Source: Utricularia gibba (lineage: Eukaryota > Plantae > Magnoliophyta). From it: DNA of 64,000 bases. The stretch is from assembly GCA_002189035.1 (NCBI GenBank), contig CM007989.1, positions 2,728,001 to 2,792,000 of the forward strand. Reading direction: 5' to 3'. The stretch's first letter is position 1. Each line of letters opens with the position of its first letter. Positions 13-27,295 of this stretch are shown piece by piece. The position numbers and the translations under genes were made by a program. Below the pieces are notes generated by a model, which was not told the origin of the DNA, did not search any database, and saw only the letters and a program-made list of their open reading frames with translations.

Positions 13-3000
13 TTGACTGAGAATCTGAGTCACACTCGGAGATTGTCCATGCCTTCACAGTATGTTGTAGATGGGAATTCAAGTCAGTATTTCAATGATT
101 CCAAAGCTAATGTAAATGAATCAAGCCACTTTTTAGGTGAACAGCTCATGAATCAGAGTTCAGTCAACTTTAAACAACCACTTTTTCAGGGCGTTCAGGC
201 CCCATATGTTCCTGCCGCTGGAAGGTCATCTGATGGACGACCATCTCATGCCCTGGTTGCATTTGGTTTTGGTGGAAAGCTTATTATAATGAAACCTAAT
301 TCCCCTAGTGAAAACATAAACTTTGTTCGTCAGGTCTGTGCTATTTCTCGTCCTTGTGCATTCTTATCAGCTTCTTCTAAAGATTTCTTTCTCAAAATGC
401 TTTGATTTTCATGAAGAATGATTTGGGAGGCCAGTTATCTATCATGAACTTGGCGGAGATTGCAAATGCCAATCGTGATGCTTCAATCCATGGAAGGGGA
501 GAAAATGATCTTTTCCAGGCTCTCTGTCACCATCCCATTCCTGGCCCACTTACCAGCGGATTTGGTGGCATGAAAGAGTTAAACAAATGGATTGATGAGA
601 GTATTGCAAAACTGGAACCTTTCAATGTGAACAGAGTGTTGCAGTTGCTGTTGTCCTTGCTTAAAATAGCTTGCCAACACTATGGGAAACTCCGTTCTCC
701 ATACGGTACAGACATTTTGAAGGTAAATGAATCTTCTTGTTGATGAATGAAAAAGAGATTTCTTTGGGAAAACTTGAGGATTTTTTGTGCATAGAACAAC
801 AATGCTTCTGTTGGCAAACGTTGCCCATTATTAGTTAATTATTTTGTTTTTTTCACTTCATAAAGCCTGCTCTTTTATCAGGAAAATGATTCCCCAGAGT
901 CTGCAGTTGCCAGATTGTTTGCATCTGCGAAGGGGAATGATCCTTATCTTAGTCAGTATGCAACCACATCATGGTGCTTGCAGCAAATGCCATCTGATGG
1001 AGAAATACAGGTATCCTGGGCTCTATGGATTTATGTAGTTTTAATTTCATGAGTATTGTGTATTTCTAAGATTTTTAACTTTAATTCGTAGTCCACTGCT
1101 GCTGAGGTTCAAAAACTACTGGTGTCTGGAAGAAAGAGGGAAGCATTGCAATGTGCACAAGAGGGTCAATTGTGGGGTCCAGCCATTGTTCTTGCTGCAC
1201 AACTTGGTGATCAAGTATGTCGCACTGGGCCTCTTTATGATTAATGCTAGATACTTGATTGCTGGTTATTAAGTACTTAAACTATCCGTGCAGTTCTATG
1301 CTGAAACTGTTAAGCAAATGGCACTTCGCCAGTTGGTATCAGGCTCGCCTTTGCGCACATTATGTCTTCTAATTGCTGGCTGCCCAGCTGATGTTTTTTC
1401 AGCTGGAAGCTCAAGTAAAGGCACCCTTTCTGGTGCTATGAATATGCCCCAGGAGACCACACAGGCATGGAGTAAATATTGCATCTTAATATGTGCTCTT
1501 TGTGATTTTGGTGAATAATTGAGAATATGTTCAATACGAGTTTTCTGGATTATTTGGAGTTATTTATTTTTATTTCCTCTTTTTAAATTTTAAACGTCAC
1601 GTTCTTCAGGAGGGTTGAAGTTTTGTTTGTTTTCTTCATTAATTTTTCATATTTGAAATTGGCAGTGTGGTATCAATGGCATGCTGGATGACTGGGAAGA
1701 AAATTTGGCGGTGATAACTGCAAACCGAACAAAGGGTGATGAACTTGTGCTTGTTCACCTGGGAGATTGTTTATGGAAGGAAAAAAATGATGTATGTTCT
1801 TTCTTTTTGTTTTCTTGGAAGTACAATCACGAAGGTTTGGAATTGCATTTTTAATCTCATATGCTACAGATAATTGCTGCACACATATGCTATTTGGTAG
1901 CAGAAGCCGTCTTTGAGCCATATTCAGACAGTGCTAGGTTGTGTCTTCTCGGAGCAGATCACTGGAAGTCACCCCGAACATATGCAAGTGCAGAAGCAAT
2001 TCAGGTAACTTATATTACCCTATGTTCAATGTAACCCAGTAAACGTAGCTGAATGATTTAGGATAAAGCAAAAATATTGAACGTAAGATTTTTTCCATTT
2101 CCCTTTCTTTCTTTCCTAGCACTTATGTGTGTCAGGATTGCTTTGTTATCTGATTTTTGTACTGGTGATTCTTCACTAATATGTATTGGGGTGCCAGAGT
2201 TTGGCGTTGGCTGATTATACAAAACCATATATGACAATAGAAACTTAAGCTGATTATACAAAACGTAGCTGAATGGTTTGGTTGCTTGCTTGAAGCAGTG
2301 TATTTGATCTTTATGTTTAATGCTAAATGCACTCGAATTATGATATCCTTTTATTGTCAGATCACTAGTATATATTAGGCTACCTCCAGAGGCATAGTTC
2401 TTCACTCGTTTTGTTTCTGCTGCTGAACTGTTAGCTTGTGCTTATTTCCACCTGCAGAGAACCGAGATATACGAGTATTCAAAAACTCTTGGGAACTCCC
2501 AGTTTGTGCTGCTTCCGTTTCAACCATACAAGTTTGTGTATGCAATGATGTTGATCGAAGTTGGCAAAATATCAGAGGCGTTAAAGTACCAACTCTTCCT
2601 TAGTCTTGTTAAGTAGTTTTTCCTTCGTTTCTCAATAATGTAATCAAAACAGGTACTGCCAAGCTGTTTTAAAATCACTTAAAACAGGCCGTAATCCAGA
2701 GGTGGAAAATTTGAGACATTTAGTTTCGTCTCTTGAAGATAGGATCAAAGGTCATCAGCAGGTATTTGTCTTATCATGCTGTTCCTTTTTTTGCCATTGG
2801 GTTACTATCAACGAATTATTCCTGTGATGCAGGGAGGGTTCTCCACCAACCCTAAAGAATTTATCGGCAAGCTATTGAACCTTTTTGATAGCACAGCACA
2901 ACGTGTTGTTGGGGGCATGCCACCTGTTCCACCAACCGCCGGTTTCCCACATGGTAATGATAATAATTACCAATCAATGGGAACTAGAGTATCAGCTAGT

Positions 3001-4731
3001 CAATCGACAATGGCATTGGTGCCGTCACAGTCGATGGAGCCTATTAGTGACTGGGCAGGTGATGATAACCGAAAGTCAAAGCATATGAGAAGTGTTTCTG
3101 AACCTGACTTTGGGAGAAGTCCAATGAAGGTATGTAAGAAGTCAGGGATAAGCTACCTGAGCATTCAGTTAGAAACTGCTTTATCGTAATTATGTTACAA
3201 TATATGGGATGCTTTTGACACCAATACAGGGTCAGGCGGATCCGCCTGTGGAAGCAAGCTCTTCTGCTGCACCTGCCAAACCATCTGCATCTGGAAGTAC
3301 ATCTCGCTTTTCTAGGTTCAATTTTGGATCTCAGCTAATCCAGAAGACTGTTGGTTTAATGCTCAATCGTCAAGGCCGCCAGGTAATTTTAAGTAAAAGC
3401 TTAGGTGATCATGTTTATTTTCAATTGTTTACAGCTGATGGAAGACCTTTTTATTGGAAAATAATAAATCATGAAAACTCTTACTCTAGACAAACCAACA
3501 TAAGATCGGCATTCTTTGTCACATGCCAAACAAAAATTTGTGCAATGAATGCAATGAATTGAATCAATCAACTCAGTTTCTAATCTCCAACTAAAAACGA
3601 TCAGTAAAACTGTTTTAATGGTTAGTCAACATTTTATGACTGTAGTTAAGCTTCTTTTTACAAGTTTTGCCCTCTGTTAAGATGCTCTTCTATTTTATAG
3701 GCAAAATTAGGGGAAACTAACAAGTTCTATTACGATGAGAAACTCAAGAGATGGGTGGAAGAAGGTGCTGAACCTCCCGCTGAAGAAACTCTCCTACCTC
3801 CACCACCCACAACTACAGCAGCATCTTTCCAGAATGGGAATTCGGACTTCAACTTGCAGAGTTCGTTCCCCGCCGACGCATCTTCTCAATATAAGGGTAG
3901 TCCAGAAATCAAGTCCCCAAATATGTTAGATAACAATAATTCAGGAATGCCGCCACTTCCTCCGACAACAAACCACTTGGCATCTCGTGGTCGTATGGGC
4001 GTCCGACAAAGGTAAGTTCTTTAACACACTTCATTGAACCCACCTACAATCTTGATACTCTGGAATTTGTGCCACTGTTGTTGGCGCAAGTCATTTGGAA
4101 TTTGTGCATCAACGTAGATAGATGGTACTGAGTATTAAACAACATGAAGTAGAAATCATGAGCTTCAGTGGTACTGTTTGTTATCTGTATTCTGTCACCT
4201 CTAAGCATCTAACTGTTATGTTATCTGTATCATGCTTGCAGGTACGTGGACACCTTTAACCAAGGTGTTGGGAACGCCAGTTCGTTCCGGTCACCTGCTG
4301 CTCCCATCAAACCAGCAGCTGTTGGAGGCAACACCAAATTTTTCGTGCCAGCTTCGATTTCCACCACCGAAGAGCCATCCCAGGAAGTTGCATATAGCAA
4401 TCAAAATGACTCATCTACTCCCCCACTCAAGAGCGATTCATTGGAACCTACTCCATCTCCTGCTACAGTGCAAAGAATAGGAAGTATGAACAGCATCCCA
4501 AACAAGACGATAAGTGGCAACAGCTCCATCTCTGTGCAGTCCCGGCGCTCCGCTTCGTGGAGTGGAAGCTTAAACGGGTCCTTCAGCCCCCCACCCAAGG
4601 CTGAAGTAAGGCACTTGGGAGAGGTTTCGGAGCAGCCCTACTACCACCACCAACAACAACAACCTTCAGCTTTCATGGCAGGTGAGTCGTCCGGTGGGTT
4701 CGGCGACGAGCTACATGAAGTGGAACTTTGA
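13..4731 (+). CDS. SEC16: Protein transport protein SEC16-like (COPII/ER exit site), multi-exon, 5' part lies outside the window
   Basis: Exons join in frame and give plant SEC16 motifs: SHALVAFGFGGKLI, GQLWGPAIVLAAQLG, DDWEENLAVITANRT, FQPYKFVYA, KFYYDEKLKRWVEEG and C-terminal ELHEVEL*. Confidence 0.93.
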
Positions 4732-17009: not shown

Positions 17010-18425
17010 ATGCACAAGACACCATCCTCCTCCTATCTCGGCCCCGGCGGCCTCGATCTCTCCAAGTCCTTCTTCACCACGCTCCCTGGCGTAGAACATC
17101 CTTCGCCGACCAAACGCCGCACCAAGATCACCGTCGTCGGTGTTGGAAACGTCGGTATGGCGATTGCTCAGACGATTTTAACTCAGGATCTCGCCGATGA
17201 ACTCGTCCTCGTCGACGCCAACCCGGAGAAGCTCCGCGGCGAGATGCTCGACCTCCAGCACGCCGCTGCGTTCCTCCCACGGACCAAGATCCACGCCTCC
17301 GTCGACTACGACGCCACCGCGCACTCTGATCTTTGTATTATCACCGCAGGAGCGCGGCAGAACCCCGGGGAGAGCAGACTGGATCTCCTCAGCCGAAACG
17401 TCGCGATTTTCAAGAAAATAGTACCGCAGTTGGCGGCGTACTCGCCGGAGACGATTATTCTCGTGGTCTCGAACCCGGTTGACGTGCTCACCTATGCCGC
17501 GTGGAGATTTTCTAGGTTTCCGGCGAATCGGGTAATTGGGTCCGGTACGAATTTGGATTCGTCCAGATTCCGGTTCCTCATTGCTGATCATCTTGATGTG
17601 AATGCCCAAGATGTGCAGGTCGGTATCCTCTGTTCCCTTAATGATACAATTCCTTTTCTAATTCTAGTGGAAATCGAATCTTGACGTTGAATTAAGTGCT
17701 TATCCCTGTTGAGTAATACAGTGATTAGACTGTAATTTCTTATCCTTATGACTACTATTTGGATTGCCTGCAAGAGGCCATTACATGAGTATCCAGCTAC
17801 TTTGTATGCATATGTGTTTTGAGTACTTGTTCCCATTCTGAACCGGAACAATACCAGTTCGAGTTCAATCCAACCTCTCCAGAGGTGGATGTAACCTGCC
17901 ATGATGTCTATGTTCGATCCAGGATTCCCTTTTGAAAGCTGGATGGATTATTTTGTTGGGTGTATACTGCAGGCCTACATCGTGGGGGAGCACGGCGATA
18001 GTTCGGTGGCGCTATGGTCAAGCATCAGTGTGGGCGGAGTCCCGATCCTAAGCTTCTTACAGAGACAGCAGATCGCGTACGAGAAGCAGACCTTGGAGAA
18101 CATACACAGAGAAGTTGTGCAGAGTGCATACGAAGTCATACGCTTGAAGGGGTACACCTCTTGGGCCATAGGCTACTCCGTGGCGAACCTAGCCCGCAGC
18201 CTGCTTCGCGATCAGAGAAGAATCCATCCCGTGTCGGTCCTCGTCAGCGGTGTCCATGGCATCGAGTCCGGGAGTGTGTTCCTTAGCTTGCCTGCTATGC
18301 TCGGACGGGGCGGAGTGCTGGGGATCACCAACGTTAGCCTCTCTGAAGAAGAGACCCAACAGCTTCAAAACTCTGCCAAGACGCTGATGGAGCTGCAAGC
18401 GCAGCTGGACTATTTGATTGGCTGA
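17010..18425 (+). CDS. LDH: L-lactate dehydrogenase, canonical copy; exons 17010-17618 and 17973-18425 (353 aa)
   Basis: [36 protein letters not shown] and GYTSWAIG are all intact; GT-AG intron in phase 0. Confidence 0.96.
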
Positions 18426-18624
18426 GCTTTGAACGAATCTACTGCTATCTTATAAACCACTTTGTCTAATGTGTGTTGTCATTTCGGATTGAAAAAGGAG
18501 ATTTTGTGATTATTATAAAAGATATTCATGAAATATGAATAATAATAACTCGACCCACAAACAAAGACACGAGTGCAAGTGATGAATGAAGCATCGATGA
18601 CCGGAAAGACACCGGAGCACCGAC

Positions 18625-19004
18625 TCAGGCACACTGGAACCCAGACGGAACCTTCTTCCCGCAGTAGTTCAACAGAAGGCTCAAAGAAACAGGCACATTG
18701 AGATGAATCCCCAGTACATTCGCCTTAATGGCGGTGCAGAGGCACGCGGCGGCCTCAAGGTCCACGAGATCCTCGATCAGGGAGCAGCAGGGGTACTTGG
18801 GCGGGGTTCCGATGACCAGGTTCAACAGCCCGTTAAGCACGTCCGCGCACACGCCGAGCTTCAGAGCGTCCCTCGGGCACTTCGCTGTCCGGACGGGGGT
18901 TTGGGGTACTTATGCGGCGGCGGGGGACAAGGGACGGAGGAGGCGGATGCAGCGGCGAAGAGGAGGACGTTGAAGAGCAGAAGCACAGCTGCTTTTGAGG
19001 CCAT
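18625..19004 (-). CDS. Hybrid proline-rich protein (DC2.15/pEARLI1-like, 8-Cys motif); 1-bp frameshift at about 18889
   Basis: Signal peptide plus [13 protein letters not shown] in one frame, and [16 protein letters not shown]...PCCSLI...[10 protein letters not shown]...[12 protein letters not shown] in the next frame. Confidence 0.9.
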
Positions 19005-20501
19005 GGTGCTGCAACAACTGAGGCTGTGGATGCTGAGAGTGAGTCCCATGTGGTGTATTTATAGTTGGGAATGTGATGCATTAAAAAAACGAAAATAAGC
19101 AGTAAACTGGCACTCAACAAGAGAAGACAGGAAGGGGTTAGCCGGGTTAAGCAGCCATGTGAGCATGATTTGAAGGTCTGATGGTGAAGGGAGCATGGAG
19201 AGCATTCAAAAAGATGACACAGTGGATCCCCCCACCGCTGCCCATGAAGGTGACTATTCATGTCCTCTCCCGATTTTTCTAGTCTAGATATGGAATTACA
19301 AAATGTGTGGCCACCAACAAACCTTCACATTTTTTTTTTCAAAATAAATATATATTTTCGCATTTTAATAGAGGGAGACAGCTAGAGAGATTCCTTGTTT
19401 TTTTTCAGAATAAAATAATAATTACAATAGTGACGGATATGTCCCTCCAAATTGTAAGAATTGATATAAATTTTGGTTTTGACAGATATTAAATATTAGT
19501 AGAATTATTTTATATTTTTATAGAATATTATTAAGATATTTATGAAAACTTATCTAAAAAATAATATTATATTTTACTATTATAAGATTAATTAAATCTA
19601 TCTCACAAATGAAATTGTCTTCTATCTTGATTGAATGATTAAATAATCAAATGTTTTCATATCTAATCTTTGAAATTTAATTATCAAATATATGATTAAT
19701 ATATTGTGTAACATAGAATAATATTTTATATCCTATTGAACAAATCATAAATATTTGAATTCAGATTCATCTTACATTACTAGAGAAATGACTATTCAAA
19801 ATAAGAGTTCTAATAAAAGTTATGAACTAAGAGCAACAAGAACACATAAGCTCAAAAAGCAACAACTCTTGTTCATTTTTTTTCCTTTGACATCGTAACT
19901 TTGCCTTCCTTGTTATTCGGGTTCATAATCTCTTAAGCAACTTTTGATTCGTTCGTATTTTTTTCTAATAATTTATCTCAATAAGATTATTTTTCTAATG
20001 ATTGATTCTTACTGTATACATTACATTGTTTCGAATCTCATTTCAAGATTGTCGTATTGAGCCATGAAAGCTGATCGTTGGATTCAACTTGAAATTTCGT
20101 TCATGTCATTTAAAGAGGCTGAACGTGACCGACTTGCAACTTACTTCGACGTGATGATTCTCACTATGTACAACACAATGTTTCAAAGATCATTCAAAGC
20201 CGATCGTCGTTGGAGATGTTGGTTTTCTTCATTCTCCCTATTGATGATATTCATGATGTCATGTGCAGAATCACATTGAATCTGCAAGGCTGAGTGCTTA
20301 GGTAAATCATTGGGTTAGGACATGGCTGTGAGCCAGTTTATTAAAGGGTTAGGTGAGTTATTAGTGTAATTAGAGGATGTCACCCGTGATTTGATTACTT
20401 GGTGCGTCTTTTTGAGTGTCGTGAAGGAAATAGGGCACCACCCTCTCCCAGTTTATTGCAAGTTACACAGAGATGCAGGAAGCAGCAATCAAATGGAAGA
20501 C

Positions 20502-20935
20502 TCAGAGAGGAGGGCAGACAAAGCCAGGAGGGGATTCAATCCACATGTTGCGAGCACCTGAAGGGCCAAAGGAAGGAATATGTTGAGATTCAGAAGCCTG
20601 AGTCTCAGACTGGTGCACAGGCAAATCGCTGCTTCAAGCTCCAGCAGCCCCTGGATCACCGGGCAGCAGGTGTTGGCCACTGGATCTCCAAGGCCGATGT
20701 GCACCAACCCTCCCAGTACATCCACACACAGCCCCAGTTTCAGAGCGTCTATCGGGCATGTTGCGGCTGCCGGCGGTGGCGGCGAGATGGGAATCACCGG
20801 ACGTGGACTTGGAACACGACGGCGGCGCGTGTTGGGAGTAGGTGTAGAGGTGCAGTTGAGCCGTGAAGCTAAAGCTTGTGGAGTGAAGAACATGCACAGA
20901 AATAGAACGGCAGCAGCCTTGACGATGGCTCCCAT
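20502..20935 (-). CDS. Second hybrid proline-rich protein (8-Cys motif); 1-bp frameshift near the C-terminus
   Basis: Signal peptide, Pro-rich linker, CPIDALKLGLCVDVL, CCPVIQGL, ICLCTSL. Adding one C restores the typical end CGLNPPPGFVCPPL* (stop at 20502-20504). Confidence 0.9.
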
Positions 20936-22320
20936 GGTGAGCCAAGCTTGGGATTTCCGTGACGCCGTCTCTTGAAGAAGACTAGTATTTATAGGATAAA
21001 TTTGGTTTTTTTATATAACTTAAATTTTACAATTATAATTAAATGTATTTAGAAATATTTTATTTTTAATATTTCATGTAATTATGAGATCTCATCCAAA
21101 ACGAGATTAATCCTATGCTGATTATGAATGAGATAAAATAGATTAAACATAATTACCACACGAACTTTATACGATAAAATTTCAAAATTATAGCATGTTT
21201 AAACTGAAAATCTCAAAATGGGTAACCATTGTTGATTCTTCTAATTCAAAAGAACATAAAATCATTAGTAAATTATAACACAAATGGGAGTTAATTCTTC
21301 AGGGAATGATTTGACAATGAAATAGTGGTAGGTCCTGCGAGGCTCTCCATCCCTGTGTTCGTTGAGAACCCGTGAACAAGAATGGGGTTTAAGTCTTCCT
21401 CCCCACTGTTCCTCCTCATGGAAAGCACAAGTTTCACAGCTTGGCGTCCCTGTAGACGACGTTAGAAGTGACATTAACTTGGAGGTTTTCCCGACATGAA
21501 CGCCACTCCGTGACTCTCAAAACGCTGAGTCACATTGGGTTTTTATCATCTGGCATTAATAAATGGAGTTACGGATGAAAAATAGGATGAACTCTCACAT
21601 TAAATCGTGAAGTAAAAACAGTAACAAAAAATGAAGATTTTGGATTGAAAAAATAAGTGAATGAAGAACAATGTTTATTGCAATAGAGTAGATATAAAGA
21701 TAAACTGTGGACATCAGCTTTTATAAATTCAAAAGTAACAAACTTCAAATGAAAACAGAATCTAATGATACCATGTAATGAGACTAAATTTCAGATATTA
21801 ATAGCCTAACAAACCCAGAAGGCTGATTGAGTTACCCACTTCCAATGGCTGAGTAGTCTTTATTAATTGGTCTTATTTCAGTATTCCAAAATTATCTTCT
21901 AATTTAGCAGAAGTTCGTTCAACACATGAAACACCAGATTGAAAAGTGCAGTGGATAGTTATCAGGATGTAAAAGTTTTTGTTACCATGATCTGTGCAAA
22001 AGGGGGCAGGCATACCCATCTCAGAAAGCATTTCAGAGAAGGGGTGGAGTAGATGAGGATGATTTTCGAGAGTGAAACAGCCAGCTTCTCTGGATCTTCA
22101 ATTTTCATGGCAATGCCTTTTTTTCTTAGAATCAGCGTTTTTGAAATTTAGCACCAAGTGGGACAACAATGGGAGGTTTTTTATTACATCATTCGCCGCT
22201 TATTGGCAGGTAATCACAGACACGGTCTGTGGACAACGCGACACTTTGGAGACACTGAAACACAACACTCTGCGGCTTCTAGTACGAGTTGAACATTAGT
22301 ATCCATCATCCTCCACATAA

Positions 22321-23480
22321 TCAGTTCTTGACTTTCCCTTCACGATCGAACGACCCTTGCACTTCAAGCAGTGTTTCAGCACACTTTCTAAGCTGCTGGC
22401 TCTCTTCCTCAGAGAGACTGAGGTTGGCGATCCCCAGTACTCCGGACCTTCCAAGCAAAGCCGGCAGGCTGAGAAACACTTGGCCGCCGTCGATCCCGTG
22501 GACGCCCTGGACGAGGACCGAGACGGGATGGATTCGTCTCTGGTCGCGCAGCAGGCTGCGGGCTAGATTCGCTACAGAGTAGCCGATGGCCCAAGAAGTG
22601 TACCCCTTCAAGCTTATGACTTCGTATGCACTCTGAACTACCTCCTTGTGTATGTTCTCCAGGGTTTGCTTCTTGTATGGGATCTGCTGTCTCTCCAAGA
22701 AGCTTAGGATCGGCACCCCACCGACGCTGATGCTTGACCAGAGCGCCACCGAGCTGTCGCCGTGTTCCCCCACGATGTAGGCCTACAAGAAAGATCGCAC
22801 TTCGCTTCAAGTGTTTTTTTTTTAATAATTTTTCAATTAAAATAATATAGAAAAAAAAAAGTGATTCGGACCTGGACATCGTGAGCATTCACATCAAGAT
22901 GATCGGCAATCAGGAATCGGAATCTTGAGGAGTCCAGATTTGTACCCGACCCAATAACCCGGTTCGCGGGAAAGCCGGAAAATTTCCATGCAGCGTAAGT
23001 GAGCACGTTGACGGGGTTGGAGACCACGAGGATGATAGTCTCCGGGGAGTATGTTGCTAAGGGAGGCACAATCTTCTTGAAAAGGGCGATGTTTCTGTGG
23101 AGGAGATCCAGTCTAGTCTCCCCGGGGTTCATGCGGACGCCGGCGGTTATGATACAGAGATCGGAGTTGGCGGTGGCGGCGTAATCGACGGAGGAATGGA
23201 TCTTGGAGTGGGGGAGGAAGGCGGCTGCATGCTGGAGATCGAGCATCTCACCTCGGAGCTTGTCGGAATTAGTGTCTATGAGAACGAGTTCATCAGCGAG
23301 ATGCTGGGTGAGTATAGTTTGGGAAACCGCCATGCCGACGTTTCCGACGCCGACAACGGTGACCTTGGTATTGCCTTTGGTCGGAGGCTGCGGCTTCCCT
23401 CCGGCTAGCGGGGTGAAGAATGACTTGGAGAAGTCGAGGCCACCGGGGCCAAGGAAGCAGGACGACGGAATCTTGTGCAT
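22321..23480 (-). CDS. LDH: L-lactate dehydrogenase paralog, inverted; exons 23480-22872 and 22782-22321; variant loop GVRM and NPVN
   Basis: Intact ORF with the same intron position as the first LDH; the catalytic His, Asp and Arg motifs are retained. Confidence 0.94.
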
Positions 23481-24494
23481 TGTAGCAGGATGGAAGAAGG
23501 AACCTCGATGACAATTTTAGTGGAGACTAAAGGCGGCGGATATCCTATTTATAGACGCCGGCGAATACCCAGCCCTCCTTCTCAGGCATCACCAAATCCA
23601 ACCATACAGAAACGAGCTCACTCCATGTCTCGCCATCCTAGTCAAGGGTAACCAACATCGAATCCTGCGCTTTGGATACAGTAACCGCAAGTCATCGACG
23701 GATCCGCACCAAAGAGAGCGATGTCAAACCTCCAGCTAACATGTAGAAAAATGCAATCTACTGCAACAAGTTACATTCATAGAATTCCTGATGTAAGCAT
23801 CGTGGATATCACCCTATTGTGTCACCAAGTTGACTTGATCCCATTCAATTGAAAAGATCATTACAAGCATCTGTTTTGTATTTAAACATACAATTTTATA
23901 TAAAGATTTGAAAATGAAATAATTAAATATATAATTGATTATAAATCACTAATAATTATTTTGATATAATCTTTTCTAATAAGATTTACATTTGTTCCAA
24001 CCCATCATATATTTAATTTTAACATTCTCAACCATGAATGTGGCATTTTACTATGTTATGTCTTCAATCGCATCCAATTTTTGACATCTTAGGCGTTCTC
24101 GGTTGTATCGATTCTGCACCTTCTTTGAGAAAAGAAGCTGTGTGCTTCATGGGTCCATCCTACGATAATACCACCATCGAAGCTTTCGCACAGAAGTTAC
24201 TGCCGAGAGATGGGAATTAAAATGGTACGTATCTATCGTATTCAAAGTCATACCACCAACCTGCCGACGGCGCCGACGAGGCAATGCATGATGCATATGA
24301 TTACAGAATTCTTCCTTGAAATCAACAATTCAATCCAGGGGTTTTGTGCCATAATCCCATCAGAGAGTGAGTCTGCACCAAAGACACCATGGGCTGCACA
24401 CCGTTTCAATTTGAACCAGTTCCCGGTTCTCCTCCTCCCTCGTATAAATTGTGCAGGCACTGGTCATCTCTTCCAGTGAAATCAAGATTGCAAC

Positions 24495-26040
24495 ATGATA
24501 TCGGGAGAGGACATCTATAGGATAATTTCCGGCGTGATGCCACTCTACATGGCCATCGCCTTCGGGTACGCCTCGATTCGGTGGTGGCGAATGTTCGACT
24601 CCGACGACTGTGCCGCCCTGAATCGGTTTAGTTGCTACTGTGCCACCCCGTTCTTGATCTTCCGTTTGGTGTCCGGCATCGCCCCTGATCAGATGAACTT
24701 TCGTTTCCTCATGGGTATTGCTGTTGGTAACTTGATCGTAGTTGTTGCCCTAGCACTGTGGCTTCTGTTCTCCAACAACGGGGATTTGCCATGGGCCATC
24801 ACCACGTTGTACATGTCTACTTTCAAGAACACCGTGATTGTTGGGGTGCCAATGCTGGATGCGATGTACGGTCCCTTAGGGGTGGACTTGGTGACACAGG
24901 CCGGTGCCCTAAGTTACATAATTTGGGTCCCTGCCTTCTTGTTCCTCCTCGAATCCCGAAAAGCGTATTCCAGGGACGAAGCCGATGCGGCGGAGATGGG
25001 GGAGCAGCAAACACTCTCTCATTTCAGTAGGCTGAGGCAAACCCTCAGGATAGTGTGTTGGAAGCTGGCTACAAACCCCAACGCCTACGCCCCGGTCATG
25101 GGTCTCACGTGGGCTTTCATAGCCCAAAGGTGCGGTTCCATGTTCAGAAACTAACAGATTGGAAGATGGAATTGAAATAACATATGCATGTAAGAATGAT
25201 AGGTGGCATGTCGAGATACCTGTTATCGTCAATGGGTCGATCGTACTGATGGCGAACACTGCACGGACAGTGAGCATGTTCGCCCTTGGTAAGGAAGGAG
25301 TCAATCGAGACACAGATCCTAAAGAGATCTTCGTGTCCTAATCAGTTTTTTTTATTTTTTTTTTGTAGGAATGTTCATGGGAATGCAAGAAAAAATTGTG
25401 GCTTCCGGGGTTGTCCTAGCGTCGTACGGCATGCTTCTCTCGTTTGTCGTAGCGCCCCTTACAGCAGCCGTAGGGTGCATGGCTCTTGGACTCAGATCCG
25501 ACCCGCTCAGGATCGCTATCATCCAGGTTTGTTTGCTTATCCTTGCCAGGAATGTTGTTTAACTGGGAATGCAGTATGCGAGAGAAGTCAATTACAATTC
25601 AGTAAAATTGCAAGAATTAGGGTTCTTCGAATGCCAGAATCAAATCCCATCCCAATAGTGTCTGGTATATAGTTCATGATTGAGTTCAGGGCTAATATCA
25701 TGCATTCATGACGATGTAAATCAAAGGAAACTTTGGGTCCAACTTAAAGTATTGAGTTGAATCTACGCTCCCAAACCTGGAATAACAGCAGCCAATGCTT
25801 TGTAACCACAGGCTGCACTGCCGGAAGCCGTGGCGGCGTTCACATTCGCCAAGGAGTACAATCTGCACGGAGACGTGCACAGCACAGTGTAAGTTCCCCA
25901 GCCTCGGCCCTCAATCCCTTGGAATGGATCACACCTGACTTCGCTGCTGCTTGGTGTTTTACCGCAGGATATTTTTGAGCACGATGGCATCTCTTCCTCT
26001 CTTAACAGGATACTACGCAATTTTAAATGCTCTGCACTGA
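24495..26040 (+). CDS. PIN5: Short (PIN5-like) auxin efflux carrier, strongly divergent; exons 24495-25129, 25203-25288, 25369-25526, 25812-25888, 25968-26040
   Basis: MI..D.Y N-terminus, PLY.A...GY.S.RWW, ALNR, NPNAY, IAIIQ|AALP and FAKEYNLH; typical PIN C-terminal exon pattern, all in frame. The PIN5 orthology is inferred. Confidence 0.85.
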
Positions 26041-26302: not shown

Positions 26303-27295
26303 TCAGGAATCAATGAGGCCGCAATTGGTGATCACCACCTTGGAGTACGGCCTGTTGAACCCTCTCTCCGCCACAACCGCCCTCTTGTCTCCGATCAACT
26401 TCGCCACCCTGCAAACAACATCAGGCCCAGTATTTCAATGGTCTACTCATAAATCGGGCTGAAATTCGACATCATCTATAAAATGAAGTGGAGAGGGTTA
26501 CCTGAAGTAAGGAGAAGATGAGTTCTCTTGCACAGTTCTGACTTGGGAGATCCTCTCTACCACATCCATTCCTCTGATGATTCTGCCGATCACTAGCGCC
26601 GACTCGTCCAACTCCGGGGAGTCTCGCAGCACGATCGCGAACTCCGTCCCATTCGGCTCCACGCCCACTGCCTCTTCATCGATCTCCAGCTTTCCTTTCC
26701 GCGCAACCAGCTTCAATTTCGGTGGCGATTTCATCGGATCTCTCACAATTATGCTCACGCTCTTTGCTAAATTCTTTGTACCCGCGCAGTCGTTCTCCTT
26801 TTGTTTACTCCATTCCTCCAACAAAGCATCCGCCGTTGTCAGATCGTTCCCCGTCTTCCGCGCAACCTCCGCGTCCACACCGAACGATCTCAAGCCGCCG
26901 TGCTGCACGTAATTCGGCATGATTTTAACGAATTCCTTCCTGCGATAGGTCACGCCGGATTTCCCGCTCATCAGATCGGAAAATCTAGCAGCGCCTCGGG
27001 GGACGGATTCGGTGTACAGACCGATTACGATTCGCCCGACCGGTTCCCCGTCGATGGAAACGTCGATAAACGCCTCCTTAGTCGGAGACGCAGCCTGCAG
27101 GCATTCCGATGGAGAAGGAGAAAGAGAGGTTTCCGCTCTCAATTGCGGAGGACTGATGAGGCCAAGAAGCAAGGCGCCAGAGACGAACTCTCTGCGCTTG
27201 AAAAGCGGATATGGCGTTTGAATCGATGAAAACCAGGGCGCCAACGGCGGCTTAGCCAGCGGCGGCGGCATTTGGGTGGTGCAACGGCAATGCAT
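26303..27295 (-). CDS. CYP26-2: Chloroplast cyclophilin-type PPIase CYP26-2-like; exons 27295-26502 and 26408-26303
   Basis: AFIDVSIDGEPVGRIVIGLY, FVKIMPNYVQHGG, PPKLKLVARKGKLEIDEE, PNGTEF and SSPYFR|VAKLIGDKRAVVAERGFNRPYSKV. Confidence 0.9.

What the first reader, a model, noticed from the sequence alone, without database searches (positions are those of the whole stretch)
22321..23480. Inverted LDH paralog with a rewired substrate-specificity loop (GARQ to GVRM): candidate new plant 2-hydroxyacid dehydrogenase
Seen: the first LDH has [16 protein letters not shown]; the second has [16 protein letters not shown] (CAG to ATG at 23130-23132, two base changes, so not an indel error). It also has NPVD changed to NPVN (23007-23009). 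The ORF, intron, GVGNVG, catalytic GEHGD and LDSSR are intact. Established: this Gln (position 102, standard LDH numbering) is the classic specificity determinant. Q102R gives malate dehydrogenase activity; mouse testis LDH-C carries GARMVSGE and accepts larger 2-oxoacids; engineering Met-Val-Ser into this loop of Bacillus stearothermophilus LDH broadens it to bulkier ketoacids. Inference: a neofunctionalised duplicate acting on branched-chain, aromatic or other 2-oxoacids, convergent with LDH-C.
Basis: partly seen in the sequence, partly recalled or inferred. Interest (0 to 1): 0.8.

Follow-up and report, generated by a model that had tools for sequence, protein, structure and literature searches.

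The report
Plant LDH paralog with Met102
A plant genome carries, next to its normal lactate dehydrogenase gene, an intact, transcribed and selectively maintained second copy with methionine instead of the otherwise invariant glutamine that sets substrate choice; that suggests an altered substrate range, but no enzyme assay has tested it.

Summary
Window 23480..22321 (- strand) holds an intact two-exon LDH gene of 356 aa. It lies tail-to-tail with a normal LDH at 17010..18425 (+).

- **The changes:** copy 2 reads GVRM where copy 1 reads GARQ (CAG to ATG at 23130-23132) and NPVN where copy 1 reads NPVD (23007-23009).
- **Rarity:** both residues are unique among 204 plant LDH cluster representatives, which all have Gln and Asp. 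No protein in a 5.8-billion-sequence collection shares the loop.
- **Not decaying:** all other catalytic and NAD motifs are kept. A three-taxon codon model gives omega 0.094 for copy 2 and 0.098 for copy 1, and omega = 1 is rejected (p = 1.5e-5).
- **Origin:** the duplication is old (dS about 1) and lineage-specific. The two copies are sisters, and their nearest relative is the Genlisea aurea LDH.
- **Transcription:** RNA-run contigs cover copy 2 exons at low depth and keep the Met codon. No contig crosses its splice junction.

The functional reading is plausible but untested. I think broadened specificity with pyruvate activity retained is more likely than a clean switch. Gene-wide selection gives no sign of adaptive change. 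I rate it a new variant of a known kind, of moderate interest.

The parts
22872..23480 (-). Copy 2 exon 1 (residues 1-203): plant-type N-terminal extension, GVGNVG NAD-binding motif, specificity loop, SNPVN, LDSSR
   Evidence: Pfam Ldh_1_N at 2.9e-46. TIGR01771 210.5 bits. Ungapped alignment to rat LDHA.
22783..22871 (-). Copy 2 intron: 89 nt, GT..AG, phase 0, at the same codon position as in copy 1 and in the Genlisea LDH
   Evidence: No RNA contig bridges it, so splicing is inferred from homology and not shown.
22321..22782 (-). Copy 2 exon 2 (residues 204-356 plus stop): GEHGD (His195), GYTSW (Thr246), divergent C-terminal tail
   Evidence: Pfam Ldh_1_C at 1.5e-25. TIGR01771 151.7 bits. RNA contigs at 22484-22652 (X1) and 22495-22739 (X2).
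23130..23132 (-). ATG codon: Met at the specificity position (Gln102 in canonical LDHs); copy 1 has CAG
   Evidence: 0 of 204 plant LDHs have anything but Gln. Unchanged in the X1 contig.
23136..23138 (-). GTC codon: Val at position 100 (Ala in copy 1 and in most plant LDHs)
   Evidence: Val or Ile occurs in 5 of the first 120 plant hits and Val in 35 of 146 broad representatives, so this change is not unusual.
23007..23009 (-). AAC codon: Asn at position 143 of the NPVD motif (Asp in all other plant LDHs examined)
   Evidence: 0 of 204 plant LDHs have anything but Asp. 1 of 147 broad representatives has Asn.
23546..23553 (-). TATAAATA box, 66-73 nt upstream of the copy 2 start codon
   Evidence: Read directly. 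Promoter function is inferred only.
17010..17618 (+). Copy 1 exon 1 (canonical GARQ and NPVD)
   Evidence: TIGR01771 219.7 bits.
17973..18425 (+). Copy 1 exon 2
   Evidence: The spliced joint 17618/17973 is seen in RNA contigs of X2 (depth 178) and X3 (depth 16.7).

Best explanation
Copy 2 is a working NAD-dependent L-2-hydroxyacid dehydrogenase of the canonical LDH clade. It arose from a duplication of the resident LDH gene in the lineage of this genome, a Lamiales plant whose LDHs branch next to that of Genlisea aurea (Lentibulariaceae).

Since then it has been kept under the same strong purifying selection as copy 1, and it is transcribed, apparently at a low level.

The Gln that in canonical LDHs packs against the methyl group of pyruvate has been replaced by Met, and Asp143 of the NPVD motif by Asn. 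Both changes are unique among the plant LDHs examined.

The most likely consequence (inferred, not shown) is that the enzyme still reduces pyruvate but discriminates less against 2-oxoacids with longer side chains, such as 2-oxobutyrate, 2-oxovalerate or 2-oxoisocaproate, and possibly 2-oxoglutarate. That would be a broadened range, as in mouse LDH-C, and not a clean switch.
For: **Shown**
- Intact ORF, with the intron at the same position as in copy 1 and every catalytic and NAD motif except Gln102 and Asp143.
- Ldh_1_N plus Ldh_1_C domains.
- L-LDH equivalog TIGR01771 scores 210.5 + 151.7 bits over the two exons, against a cutoff of 303.55.
- Copies 1 and 2 are sisters (SH-aLRT 97), with the Genlisea main LDH as their sister.
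- Nucleotide similarity between the copies is confined to the exons, and dS is about 1.
- Omega is 0.094 for copy 2 and 0.098 for copy 1. Omega2 = 1 is rejected (2dlnL 18.8, p = 1.5e-5).
- Exon-only contigs from RNA runs X1 and X2 keep the Met codon.
- Gln102 and Asp143 are invariant in 204 plant LDHs.
- No protein with this loop was found among 5.8e9 sequences or in JGI metagenome DNA.

**From the literature**
- Residue 102 is the specificity residue. Trichomonad LDHs use Leu there (PMC4109310), so a hydrophobic residue is compatible with pyruvate reduction.
- Mouse LDH-C has Met at this position (2LDX). It is reported as promiscuous and reduces 2-oxoglutarate (review PMC12997371).

**From my own knowledge, not retrieved**
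- Wilks et al. 1990 (Biochemistry 29:8587; only the citation was seen) put Met-Val-Ser at 102-105 of the Bacillus stearothermophilus LDH. Together with 236-237 Gly-Gly, this gave gains on 2-oxoisocaproate while pyruvate activity was retained.
Against: - No enzyme data exist.
- Only one of the three Met-Val-Ser loop changes is present. The 236-237 (Ser-Ala) and Thr246 pocket motifs are unchanged relative to copy 1.
- As far as I recall, human LDH-C has Gln here. It is also reported as promiscuous, so Met102 is not the only route to breadth.
- Epistasis around position 102 is strong in this superfamily, so effects do not transfer reliably between backgrounds.
- Omega is equal in both copies (p = 0.94), so nothing gene-wide indicates adaptive change.
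- Copy 2 differs from the consensus at 20 of 199 highly conserved columns, against 6 for copy 1. Q102M could therefore be part of a generally faster clock: dS 0.68 against 0.39.
- Expression evidence is three short low-depth contigs. No splice junction was observed, and the runs were selected because they hold this gene.
Confidence: 0.5

Rival explanations
1. Copy 2 is an ordinary second LDH isozyme. Q102M and D143N change kinetics only slightly, pyruvate and lactate remain the only relevant substrates, and the copies differ mainly in where and when they are expressed. They may also form heterotetramers, as plant LDH A and B subunits do.
For: - Two LDH genes, often close together on one contig, are common in plants: Paulownia, Quercus, Forsythia, Salvia and Castanea pairs appear.
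- Omega is identical in both copies.
- A hydrophobic residue at 102 supports pyruvate reduction in trichomonad LDH, and mouse LDH-C is still physiologically an LDH.
- The relative abundance of the two copies differs between runs. Copy 1 is about 50 times deeper in X2, but it is absent from X1 where copy 2 is seen.
Against: - If Gln102 and Asp143 were dispensable for normal LDH function, they should not be invariant in 204 of 204 plant LDHs, many of which are duplicates.
- The Gln-to-Met change needed two base substitutions in one codon.
Confidence: 0.3
2. Copy 2 has truly switched substrate. It is now a dedicated dehydrogenase for a 2-oxoacid other than pyruvate, with pyruvate activity largely lost.
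For: - Two invariant residues changed, one of them the specificity residue and the other close to Asn140 in the sequence.
- Single changes at position 102 can shift specificity by many orders of magnitude in Bacillus stearothermophilus LDH.
- The gene has been retained under purifying selection across a dS of about 1.
Against: - The rest of the pocket is the same as in copy 1.
- Met is close in size to Gln and carries no charge to attract a new substrate group.
- The natural (LDH-C) and engineered (Met-Val-Ser) precedents keep pyruvate activity (and my own knowledge).
Confidence: 0.12
3. Copy 2 is catalytically impaired or on the way to loss: a weakly expressed duplicate that has accumulated damage at conserved sites, or a non-catalytic subunit.
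For: - Copy 2 alone accounts for 16 deviations at highly conserved columns, against 2 for copy 1 alone.
- Low contig depth and no spliced read.
- Its branch is longer: the Tajima test gives 31 against 11 unique changes, p = 0.002.
Against: - Omega is 0.094 and omega = 1 is rejected.
- There is no stop or frameshift, even though this assembly does carry indel errors elsewhere.
- All catalytic residues are kept.
- Most deviations are conservative: Ile to Val, Ala to Ser, Thr to Ser.
Confidence: 0.07
4. The unusual codons are sequencing or assembly errors.
For: The assembly has single-base indel errors at 18894 and 20529.
Against: - The differences are substitutions, two of them within one codon, and not indels.
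- An independent run's contig reproduces the region, with other allelic differences but the same Met codon.
Confidence: 0.01

Closest known systems
Canonical plant L-lactate dehydrogenase (for example the LDHs of Genlisea aurea, Handroanthus impetiginosus and Paulownia fortunei; At4g17260-type)
   Same: - 79-82% amino-acid identity and the same two-exon structure.
- The same N-terminal extension, NAD motif, Arg109, Asn140, Asp168, Arg171, His195 and Thr246.
   Different: - Met instead of the invariant Gln102, and Asn instead of the invariant Asp143.
- A further 14 copy-2-only deviations at highly conserved columns.
- A different C-terminal tail.
Mouse testis LDH-C4 (PDB 2LDX)
   Same: It is a canonical-clade LDH with Met at the specificity position, in the context ITAG-x-R-M. 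It is reported to accept other 2-oxoacids, including 2-oxoglutarate.
   Different: - The loop continues Val-Ser-Gly-Gln in LDH-C and Asn-Pro-Gly-Glu here.
- LDH-C keeps NPVD. This is my inference from the hit to this segment; the alignment itself was not shown.
- The origin is independent (animal versus plant), so any similarity is convergent.
- No kinetic data exist for the plant protein.
Engineered Bacillus stearothermophilus LDH with Met-Val-Ser at 102-105, with or without Gly-Gly at 236-237 (Wilks et al. 1990; cited from my own knowledge, citation seen)
   Same: Gln102 to Met in the mobile specificity loop.
   Different: Copy 2 lacks the 103 and 105 changes and the 236-237 Gly-Gly widening. 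It adds Asp143Asn, which that work did not examine.
Convergent LDHs with a non-Gln residue at position 102 (trichomonad Leu102, Cryptosporidium Gly102, apicomplexan Lys102 with Trp107f)
   Same: They show that pyruvate reduction does not strictly need Gln at 102 (PMC4109310).
   Different: Those enzymes arose from malate dehydrogenases. Copy 2 arose within the canonical LDH clade, from a Gln102 parent.

Membership tests
Canonical NAD-dependent L-lactate dehydrogenase (TIGR01771; Pfam PF00056 + PF02866) | Ldh_1_N and Ldh_1_C domains in order | tested here: met
   PF00056 at 2.9e-46 on exon 1 and PF02866 at 1.5e-25 on exon 2.
Canonical NAD-dependent L-lactate dehydrogenase (TIGR01771; Pfam PF00056 + PF02866) | Score above the curated L-LDH equivalog cutoff, and L-LDH scoring better than the MDH models | tested here: inconclusive
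   the exons were scored separately, 210.5 + 151.7 bits against a cutoff of 303.55. The simple sum passes, but the spliced protein could not be submitted by reference. The L-LDH models outscore every MDH model on both exons.
Canonical NAD-dependent L-lactate dehydrogenase (TIGR01771; Pfam PF00056 + PF02866) | GxGxxG NAD fold and catalytic Arg109, Asn140, Asp168, Arg171, His195 and Thr246 | tested here: met
   GVGNVG, GETR, SNPV, LDSSR, GEHGD and GYTSW are read. The exon 1 residues align without gaps to rat LDHA.
Canonical NAD-dependent L-lactate dehydrogenase (TIGR01771; Pfam PF00056 + PF02866) | Gln at specificity position 102 | tested here: not met
   Met, ATG at 23130-23132. Mouse LDH-C, an accepted LDH, also has Met here. 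The feature is therefore typical of the family and not absolute.
Canonical NAD-dependent L-lactate dehydrogenase (TIGR01771; Pfam PF00056 + PF02866) | Placement inside the plant LDH clade | tested here: met
   sister to copy 1 (97), and the pair is sister to the Genlisea LDH, inside Lamiales.
Canonical NAD-dependent L-lactate dehydrogenase (TIGR01771; Pfam PF00056 + PF02866) | Pyruvate/lactate oxidoreductase activity | not testable with these tools
   Needs an enzyme assay.
Malate dehydrogenase | Arg at position 102 | tested here: not met
   Met. All known MDHs have Arg102 (PMC4109310). The MDH models score lower than the LDH models.
LDH-C-like or Met-Val-Ser-type broad-specificity LDH | Met102 together with Val103 and Ser105 in the loop | tested here: not met
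   Only Met102 is present. Copy 2 reads Met-Asn-Pro, and 2LDX reads Met-Val-Ser.
LDH-C-like or Met-Val-Ser-type broad-specificity LDH | Measured activity on 2-oxoacids larger than pyruvate | not testable with these tools
   Needs an enzyme assay.

The most novel reading that the evidence does not exclude
A plant of the bladderwort family (judged from the LDH tree) has evolved, from its fermentative LDH, a distinct L-2-hydroxyacid dehydrogenase. Its Met102/Asn143 active site gives it a physiologically used activity on a 2-oxoacid other than pyruvate, for example 2-oxobutyrate, a branched-chain or methylthio 2-oxoacid, or 2-oxoglutarate. This would be convergent with mouse LDH-C. It would be the first natural specificity-residue change described inside the plant LDH clade.
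Probability: 0.25. Interest if true: 0.65.

Novelty: new variant of a known kind. Interest (0 to 1): 0.45.

Why it matters
Residue 102 is the textbook specificity switch of the LDH/MDH superfamily. Natural departures from Gln inside the canonical LDH clade are very rare. I found none in 204 plant LDHs, and the only case among 150 broad cluster representatives was a chimeric singleton.

A selectively maintained plant paralog with Met102 and Asn143 offers a ready natural experiment. It sits beside its Gln102/Asp143 sister gene, so the two can be compared directly. It can show how much one loop residue changes specificity in a eukaryotic LDH background, and whether plants have a second LDH-derived 2-hydroxyacid dehydrogenase.

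If the two enzymes behave alike, that result would also be useful. It would show that the strict conservation of Gln102 in plants is not explained by pyruvate catalysis alone.

Tried and rejected
- **Hypoxia-responsive promoter element.** I scanned for GCCVCYGGTTTY (motif as given in PMC11660084) with up to one mismatch. There were 3 matches in the window, none near either LDH, and no more than chance. Nothing can be said about hypoxia regulation.
- **Orthologues of copy 2 with the GVRM loop.**
  - A region-restricted protein search gave 7 candidates, all with Gln.
  - A degenerate DNA pattern for T-A-G-[AV]-R-M-N-P-G-E in JGI metagenomes gave 0 hits.
  - No Logan or ENA fragment is more than 85% identical to either copy, so the species and its close relatives are absent from the protein collection.
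- **Literature.** Searches for Q102M, Asp143 or Asp140 in LDH (only docking papers and unrelated proteins) and Utricularia with LDH gave nothing usable. Teng et al. 2016 (PMC5317044) is not held.
- **Role of NPVN.** I tried to see whether NPVN matches solved MDHs. Only LDH alignments with NPVD were shown. My recollection that E. coli and mitochondrial MDHs read NPVN stays untested.
- **Distance-based branch estimates.** Biopython YN00 failed on the saturated Genlisea pair. I replaced it with my own GY94-F3x4 three-taxon likelihood model.
- **Structure prediction.** Not run. The spliced protein has no reference to hand in, and the tool returns no coordinates with which to measure contacts of residue 143.
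- **Genlisea tandem paralog as orthologue of copy 2.** Rejected. It is equally distant from both copies (46-47% identity), and its branch is too long to place.

Full report
**1. What is there**

Reading the - strand of 22000-24000 and splicing in a script gives a two-exon gene:
- exon 1 at 23480..22872;
- an 89-nt GT..AG intron at 22871..22783;
- exon 2 at 22782..22321.

The product is 356 aa. A TATAAATA box lies 66-73 nt upstream of the ATG, at 23553..23546.

A second LDH gene lies on the + strand at 17010..17618 plus 17973..18425 (353 aa). Its 354-nt intron sits at the same codon position. The two genes are tail-to-tail, 3.9 kb apart, with two Hydrophob_seed/LTP-family (proline-rich protein type) genes between them.

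A tblastn search finds no further LDH sequence in the window. Nucleotide similarity between the copies starts and stops with the exons.

**2.

The proteins are 81% identical and the coding DNA 79%. Three changes match the finding:
- GCG to GTC gives Ala100Val;
- CAG to ATG gives Gln102Met, at 23130-23132;
- GAC to AAC gives Asp143Asn, at 23007-23009.

An ungapped alignment to rat LDHA puts Met117 on Gln99 (Gln102 in dogfish numbering) and Asn158 on Asp140 (Asp143). The motifs GVGNVG, GETR (Arg109), SNPV (Asn140), LDSSR (Asp168, Arg171), GEHGD (His195) and GYTSW (Thr246) are all kept. The Ser-Ala at 236-237 is the same in both copies.

Both exons match Pfam Ldh_1_N and Ldh_1_C. They match the L-LDH equivalog TIGR01771 better than any MDH model, at 210.5 + 151.7 bits against a cutoff of 303.55.

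**3. How unusual the residues are**

- All 204 plant LDH cluster representatives have Gln at 102 and Asp at 143. They came from two searches, one seeded with copy 2 and one with a palm LDH. They span monocots, magnoliids and eudicots, and include the carnivorous Genlisea, Cephalotus and Sarracenia.
- A search that drew its words only from the loop region returned 7 candidates, none with Met.
- A degenerate DNA pattern for the loop found nothing in JGI metagenomes.
- Among the 150 closest representatives of 50%-identity clusters across all life, Gln holds position 102 in 121.
  - Met appears once, in a singleton metagenome protein that is an LDH/ribosomal-protein-S3 chimera.
  - Asn143 appears once, in a mink LDHA gene model.
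  - No representative has both residues.
- Val at position 100 is common (35 of 146) and is not noteworthy.

**4. Origin**

In maximum-likelihood trees the two copies are sisters (SH-aLRT 97). Together they are sister to the Genlisea aurea LDH, inside Lamiales. The genome is thus most likely a member of, or close to, Lentibulariaceae. I could not name the species: the runs are coded, and no protein of this species is in the collection (best hit 79% to copy 2; at most 85% to copy 1).

The duplication is old, with dS about 0.95-1.25 by pairwise methods. It appears to post-date the split from Genlisea.

**5. Selection**

Pairwise dN/dS is about 0.10.

I wrote a three-taxon GY94-F3x4 likelihood model using the Genlisea coding sequence (L001:1646-2254 plus 2683-3126) as outgroup.

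| Branch | omega | dS | dN |
|---|---|---|---|
| Copy 1 | 0.098 | 0.39 | 0.038 |
| Copy 2 | 0.094 | 0.68 | 0.064 |

- Fixing omega of copy 2 at 1 is rejected (2dlnL = 18.8, p = 1.5e-5).
- Equal omega for the two copies is not rejected (p = 0.94).

Copy 2 does evolve faster. The amino-acid relative-rate test gives 31 against 11 unique changes (p = 0.002 with Genlisea as outgroup). Its ML branch is 0.28 against 0.12. It deviates at 20 of 199 columns that are at least 95% conserved, against 6 for copy 1, with 4 shared. But synonymous change is faster too, so this is a faster clock and not relaxed constraint.

Caveats:
- only three taxa were used;
- dS on the outgroup branch is saturated (1.43);
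- the implementation is my own;
- no site-level test of positive selection was possible.

The gene is maintained.

**6. Transcription**

Logan contigs of four runs labelled with the same organism were laid on 17500-23480.

The runs are RNA:
- poly-T loose ends abut the 3' end of the neighbouring gene;
- introns and intergenic DNA are uncovered;
- the copy 1 intron is spliced out exactly (17618/17973) at depth 178 in X2 and 16.7 in X3.

Copy 2 is covered only by short exon pieces:
- X1: 22484-22652 (depth 4.8) and 23047-23315 (depth 3.4);
- X2: 22495-22739 (depth 3.3).

The X1 piece spans the Met codon and carries other differences (for example A>C at 23207, which would give Ser92Ala), but none at 23130-23132. 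This supports the Met codon independently, in another individual.

Limits:
- no contig crosses the copy 2 intron;
- contig depth is a poor measure of expression;
- X1 and X2 were selected because they contain this gene.

I conclude that copy 2 is transcribed, probably weakly, and not in proportion to copy 1. Copy 1 is about 50 times deeper in X2 and undetected in X1.

**7. Mechanism**

Established:
- In canonical LDHs Gln102 packs against the C3 methyl of pyruvate. Residue 102 is the 'specificity residue'.
- Q102R turns Bacillus stearothermophilus LDH into an MDH.
- Convergent LDHs use Leu, Gly or Lys at this position.
- Effects at 102 depend strongly on the protein background (PMC4109310).
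- Mouse LDH-C (2LDX) reads ITAGARMVSGQTR, with Met at the same position. A recent review reports LDH-C as promiscuous, including reduction of 2-oxoglutarate to S-2-hydroxyglutarate (PMC12997371).

From my own knowledge (only the citation was retrievable): Wilks et al. 1990 obtained a broad-specificity enzyme by putting Met-Val-Ser at 102-105 and Gly-Gly at 236-237. Pyruvate activity was retained.

Inference: Met is uncharged, similar in size to Gln, more hydrophobic and more flexible. Copy 2 therefore most likely still reduces pyruvate and tolerates longer aliphatic side chains better.

Points against a large shift:
- only one of the three loop changes is present (Met-Asn-Pro here);
- the 236-237 and Thr246 pocket motifs are unchanged;
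- as far as I recall, human LDH-C has Gln and is also called promiscuous.

The role of Asp143Asn is unknown. It lies three residues after Asn140 and is invariant in LDHs. I recall that E. coli and mitochondrial-type MDHs read NPVN, but I could not verify this here.

**8. Verdict**

- the residue is the right one and is rare;
- the gene is alive;
- the LDH-C parallel is real for Met102.

Neofunctionalisation and the proposed substrates remain hypotheses. My ranking:

| Reading | Confidence |
|---|---|
| Broadened-specificity L-2-hydroxyacid/lactate dehydrogenase | 0.5 |
| Ordinary isozyme with a different expression pattern | 0.3 |
| Dedicated new substrate | 0.12 |
| Impaired or decaying gene | 0.07 |
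| Sequencing or assembly artefact | 0.01 |

I rate it a new variant of a known kind, with interest 0.45.

Noticed in passing
window 18894 and 20529: RNA contigs from three runs each insert a G after these positions. The assembly therefore has 1-bp deletions in both Hydrophob_seed/LTP-family genes. The one at 18894 explains why the first gene appears as two ORFs (18625..18852 and 18861..19049, - strand). The assembly carries homopolymer-type indel errors, so broken ORFs elsewhere in this genome should be read with care.
   Followed up: partly
L001:268-720 (Genlisea aurea contig KE534779.1): About 900 bp upstream of the normal Genlisea LDH, on the same strand, lies the last exon of a second LDH-like gene. 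Its ORF is intact but only 46-50% identical to any plant LDH. It reads GEHGQ where LDHs read GEHGD and GQTSF where they read GYTSW, and its tree branch is 2.8. Its first exon, with the specificity loop, is off the contig. This is a far more divergent LDH-derived paralog in the sister lineage, and it is not an orthologue of copy 2.
   Followed up: partly
window 18489-19031 and 20426-20968 (- strand): Two Hydrophob_seed/LTP-family (hybrid proline-rich protein type) genes lie between the LDH copies, both on the - strand. They are only weakly alike at the DNA level (68% over 150 nt). The first is strongly represented in RNA contigs, at depths of 194 and 138 in X1 and X6, with a poly(A) site near 18489-18510.
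   Followed up: partly
window 17010-18425 versus 22321-23480: Synonymous divergence since the duplication is unequal (dS 0.39 for copy 1 and 0.68 for copy 2), although both genes lie 4 kb apart in one genome. GC3 is nearly the same (0.70 and 0.68). Possible causes are codon-usage constraint on the highly expressed copy 1, a local difference in mutation rate, or estimation noise from saturation.
   Followed up: no
window 24495-25154 (+) and 26498-27295 (-): The neighbours of copy 2 are a Mem_trans (auxin-efflux-carrier/PILS-type) membrane protein exon and a cyclophilin-type peptidyl-prolyl isomerase domain protein. Genes are closely packed throughout this part of the window.
   Followed up: no
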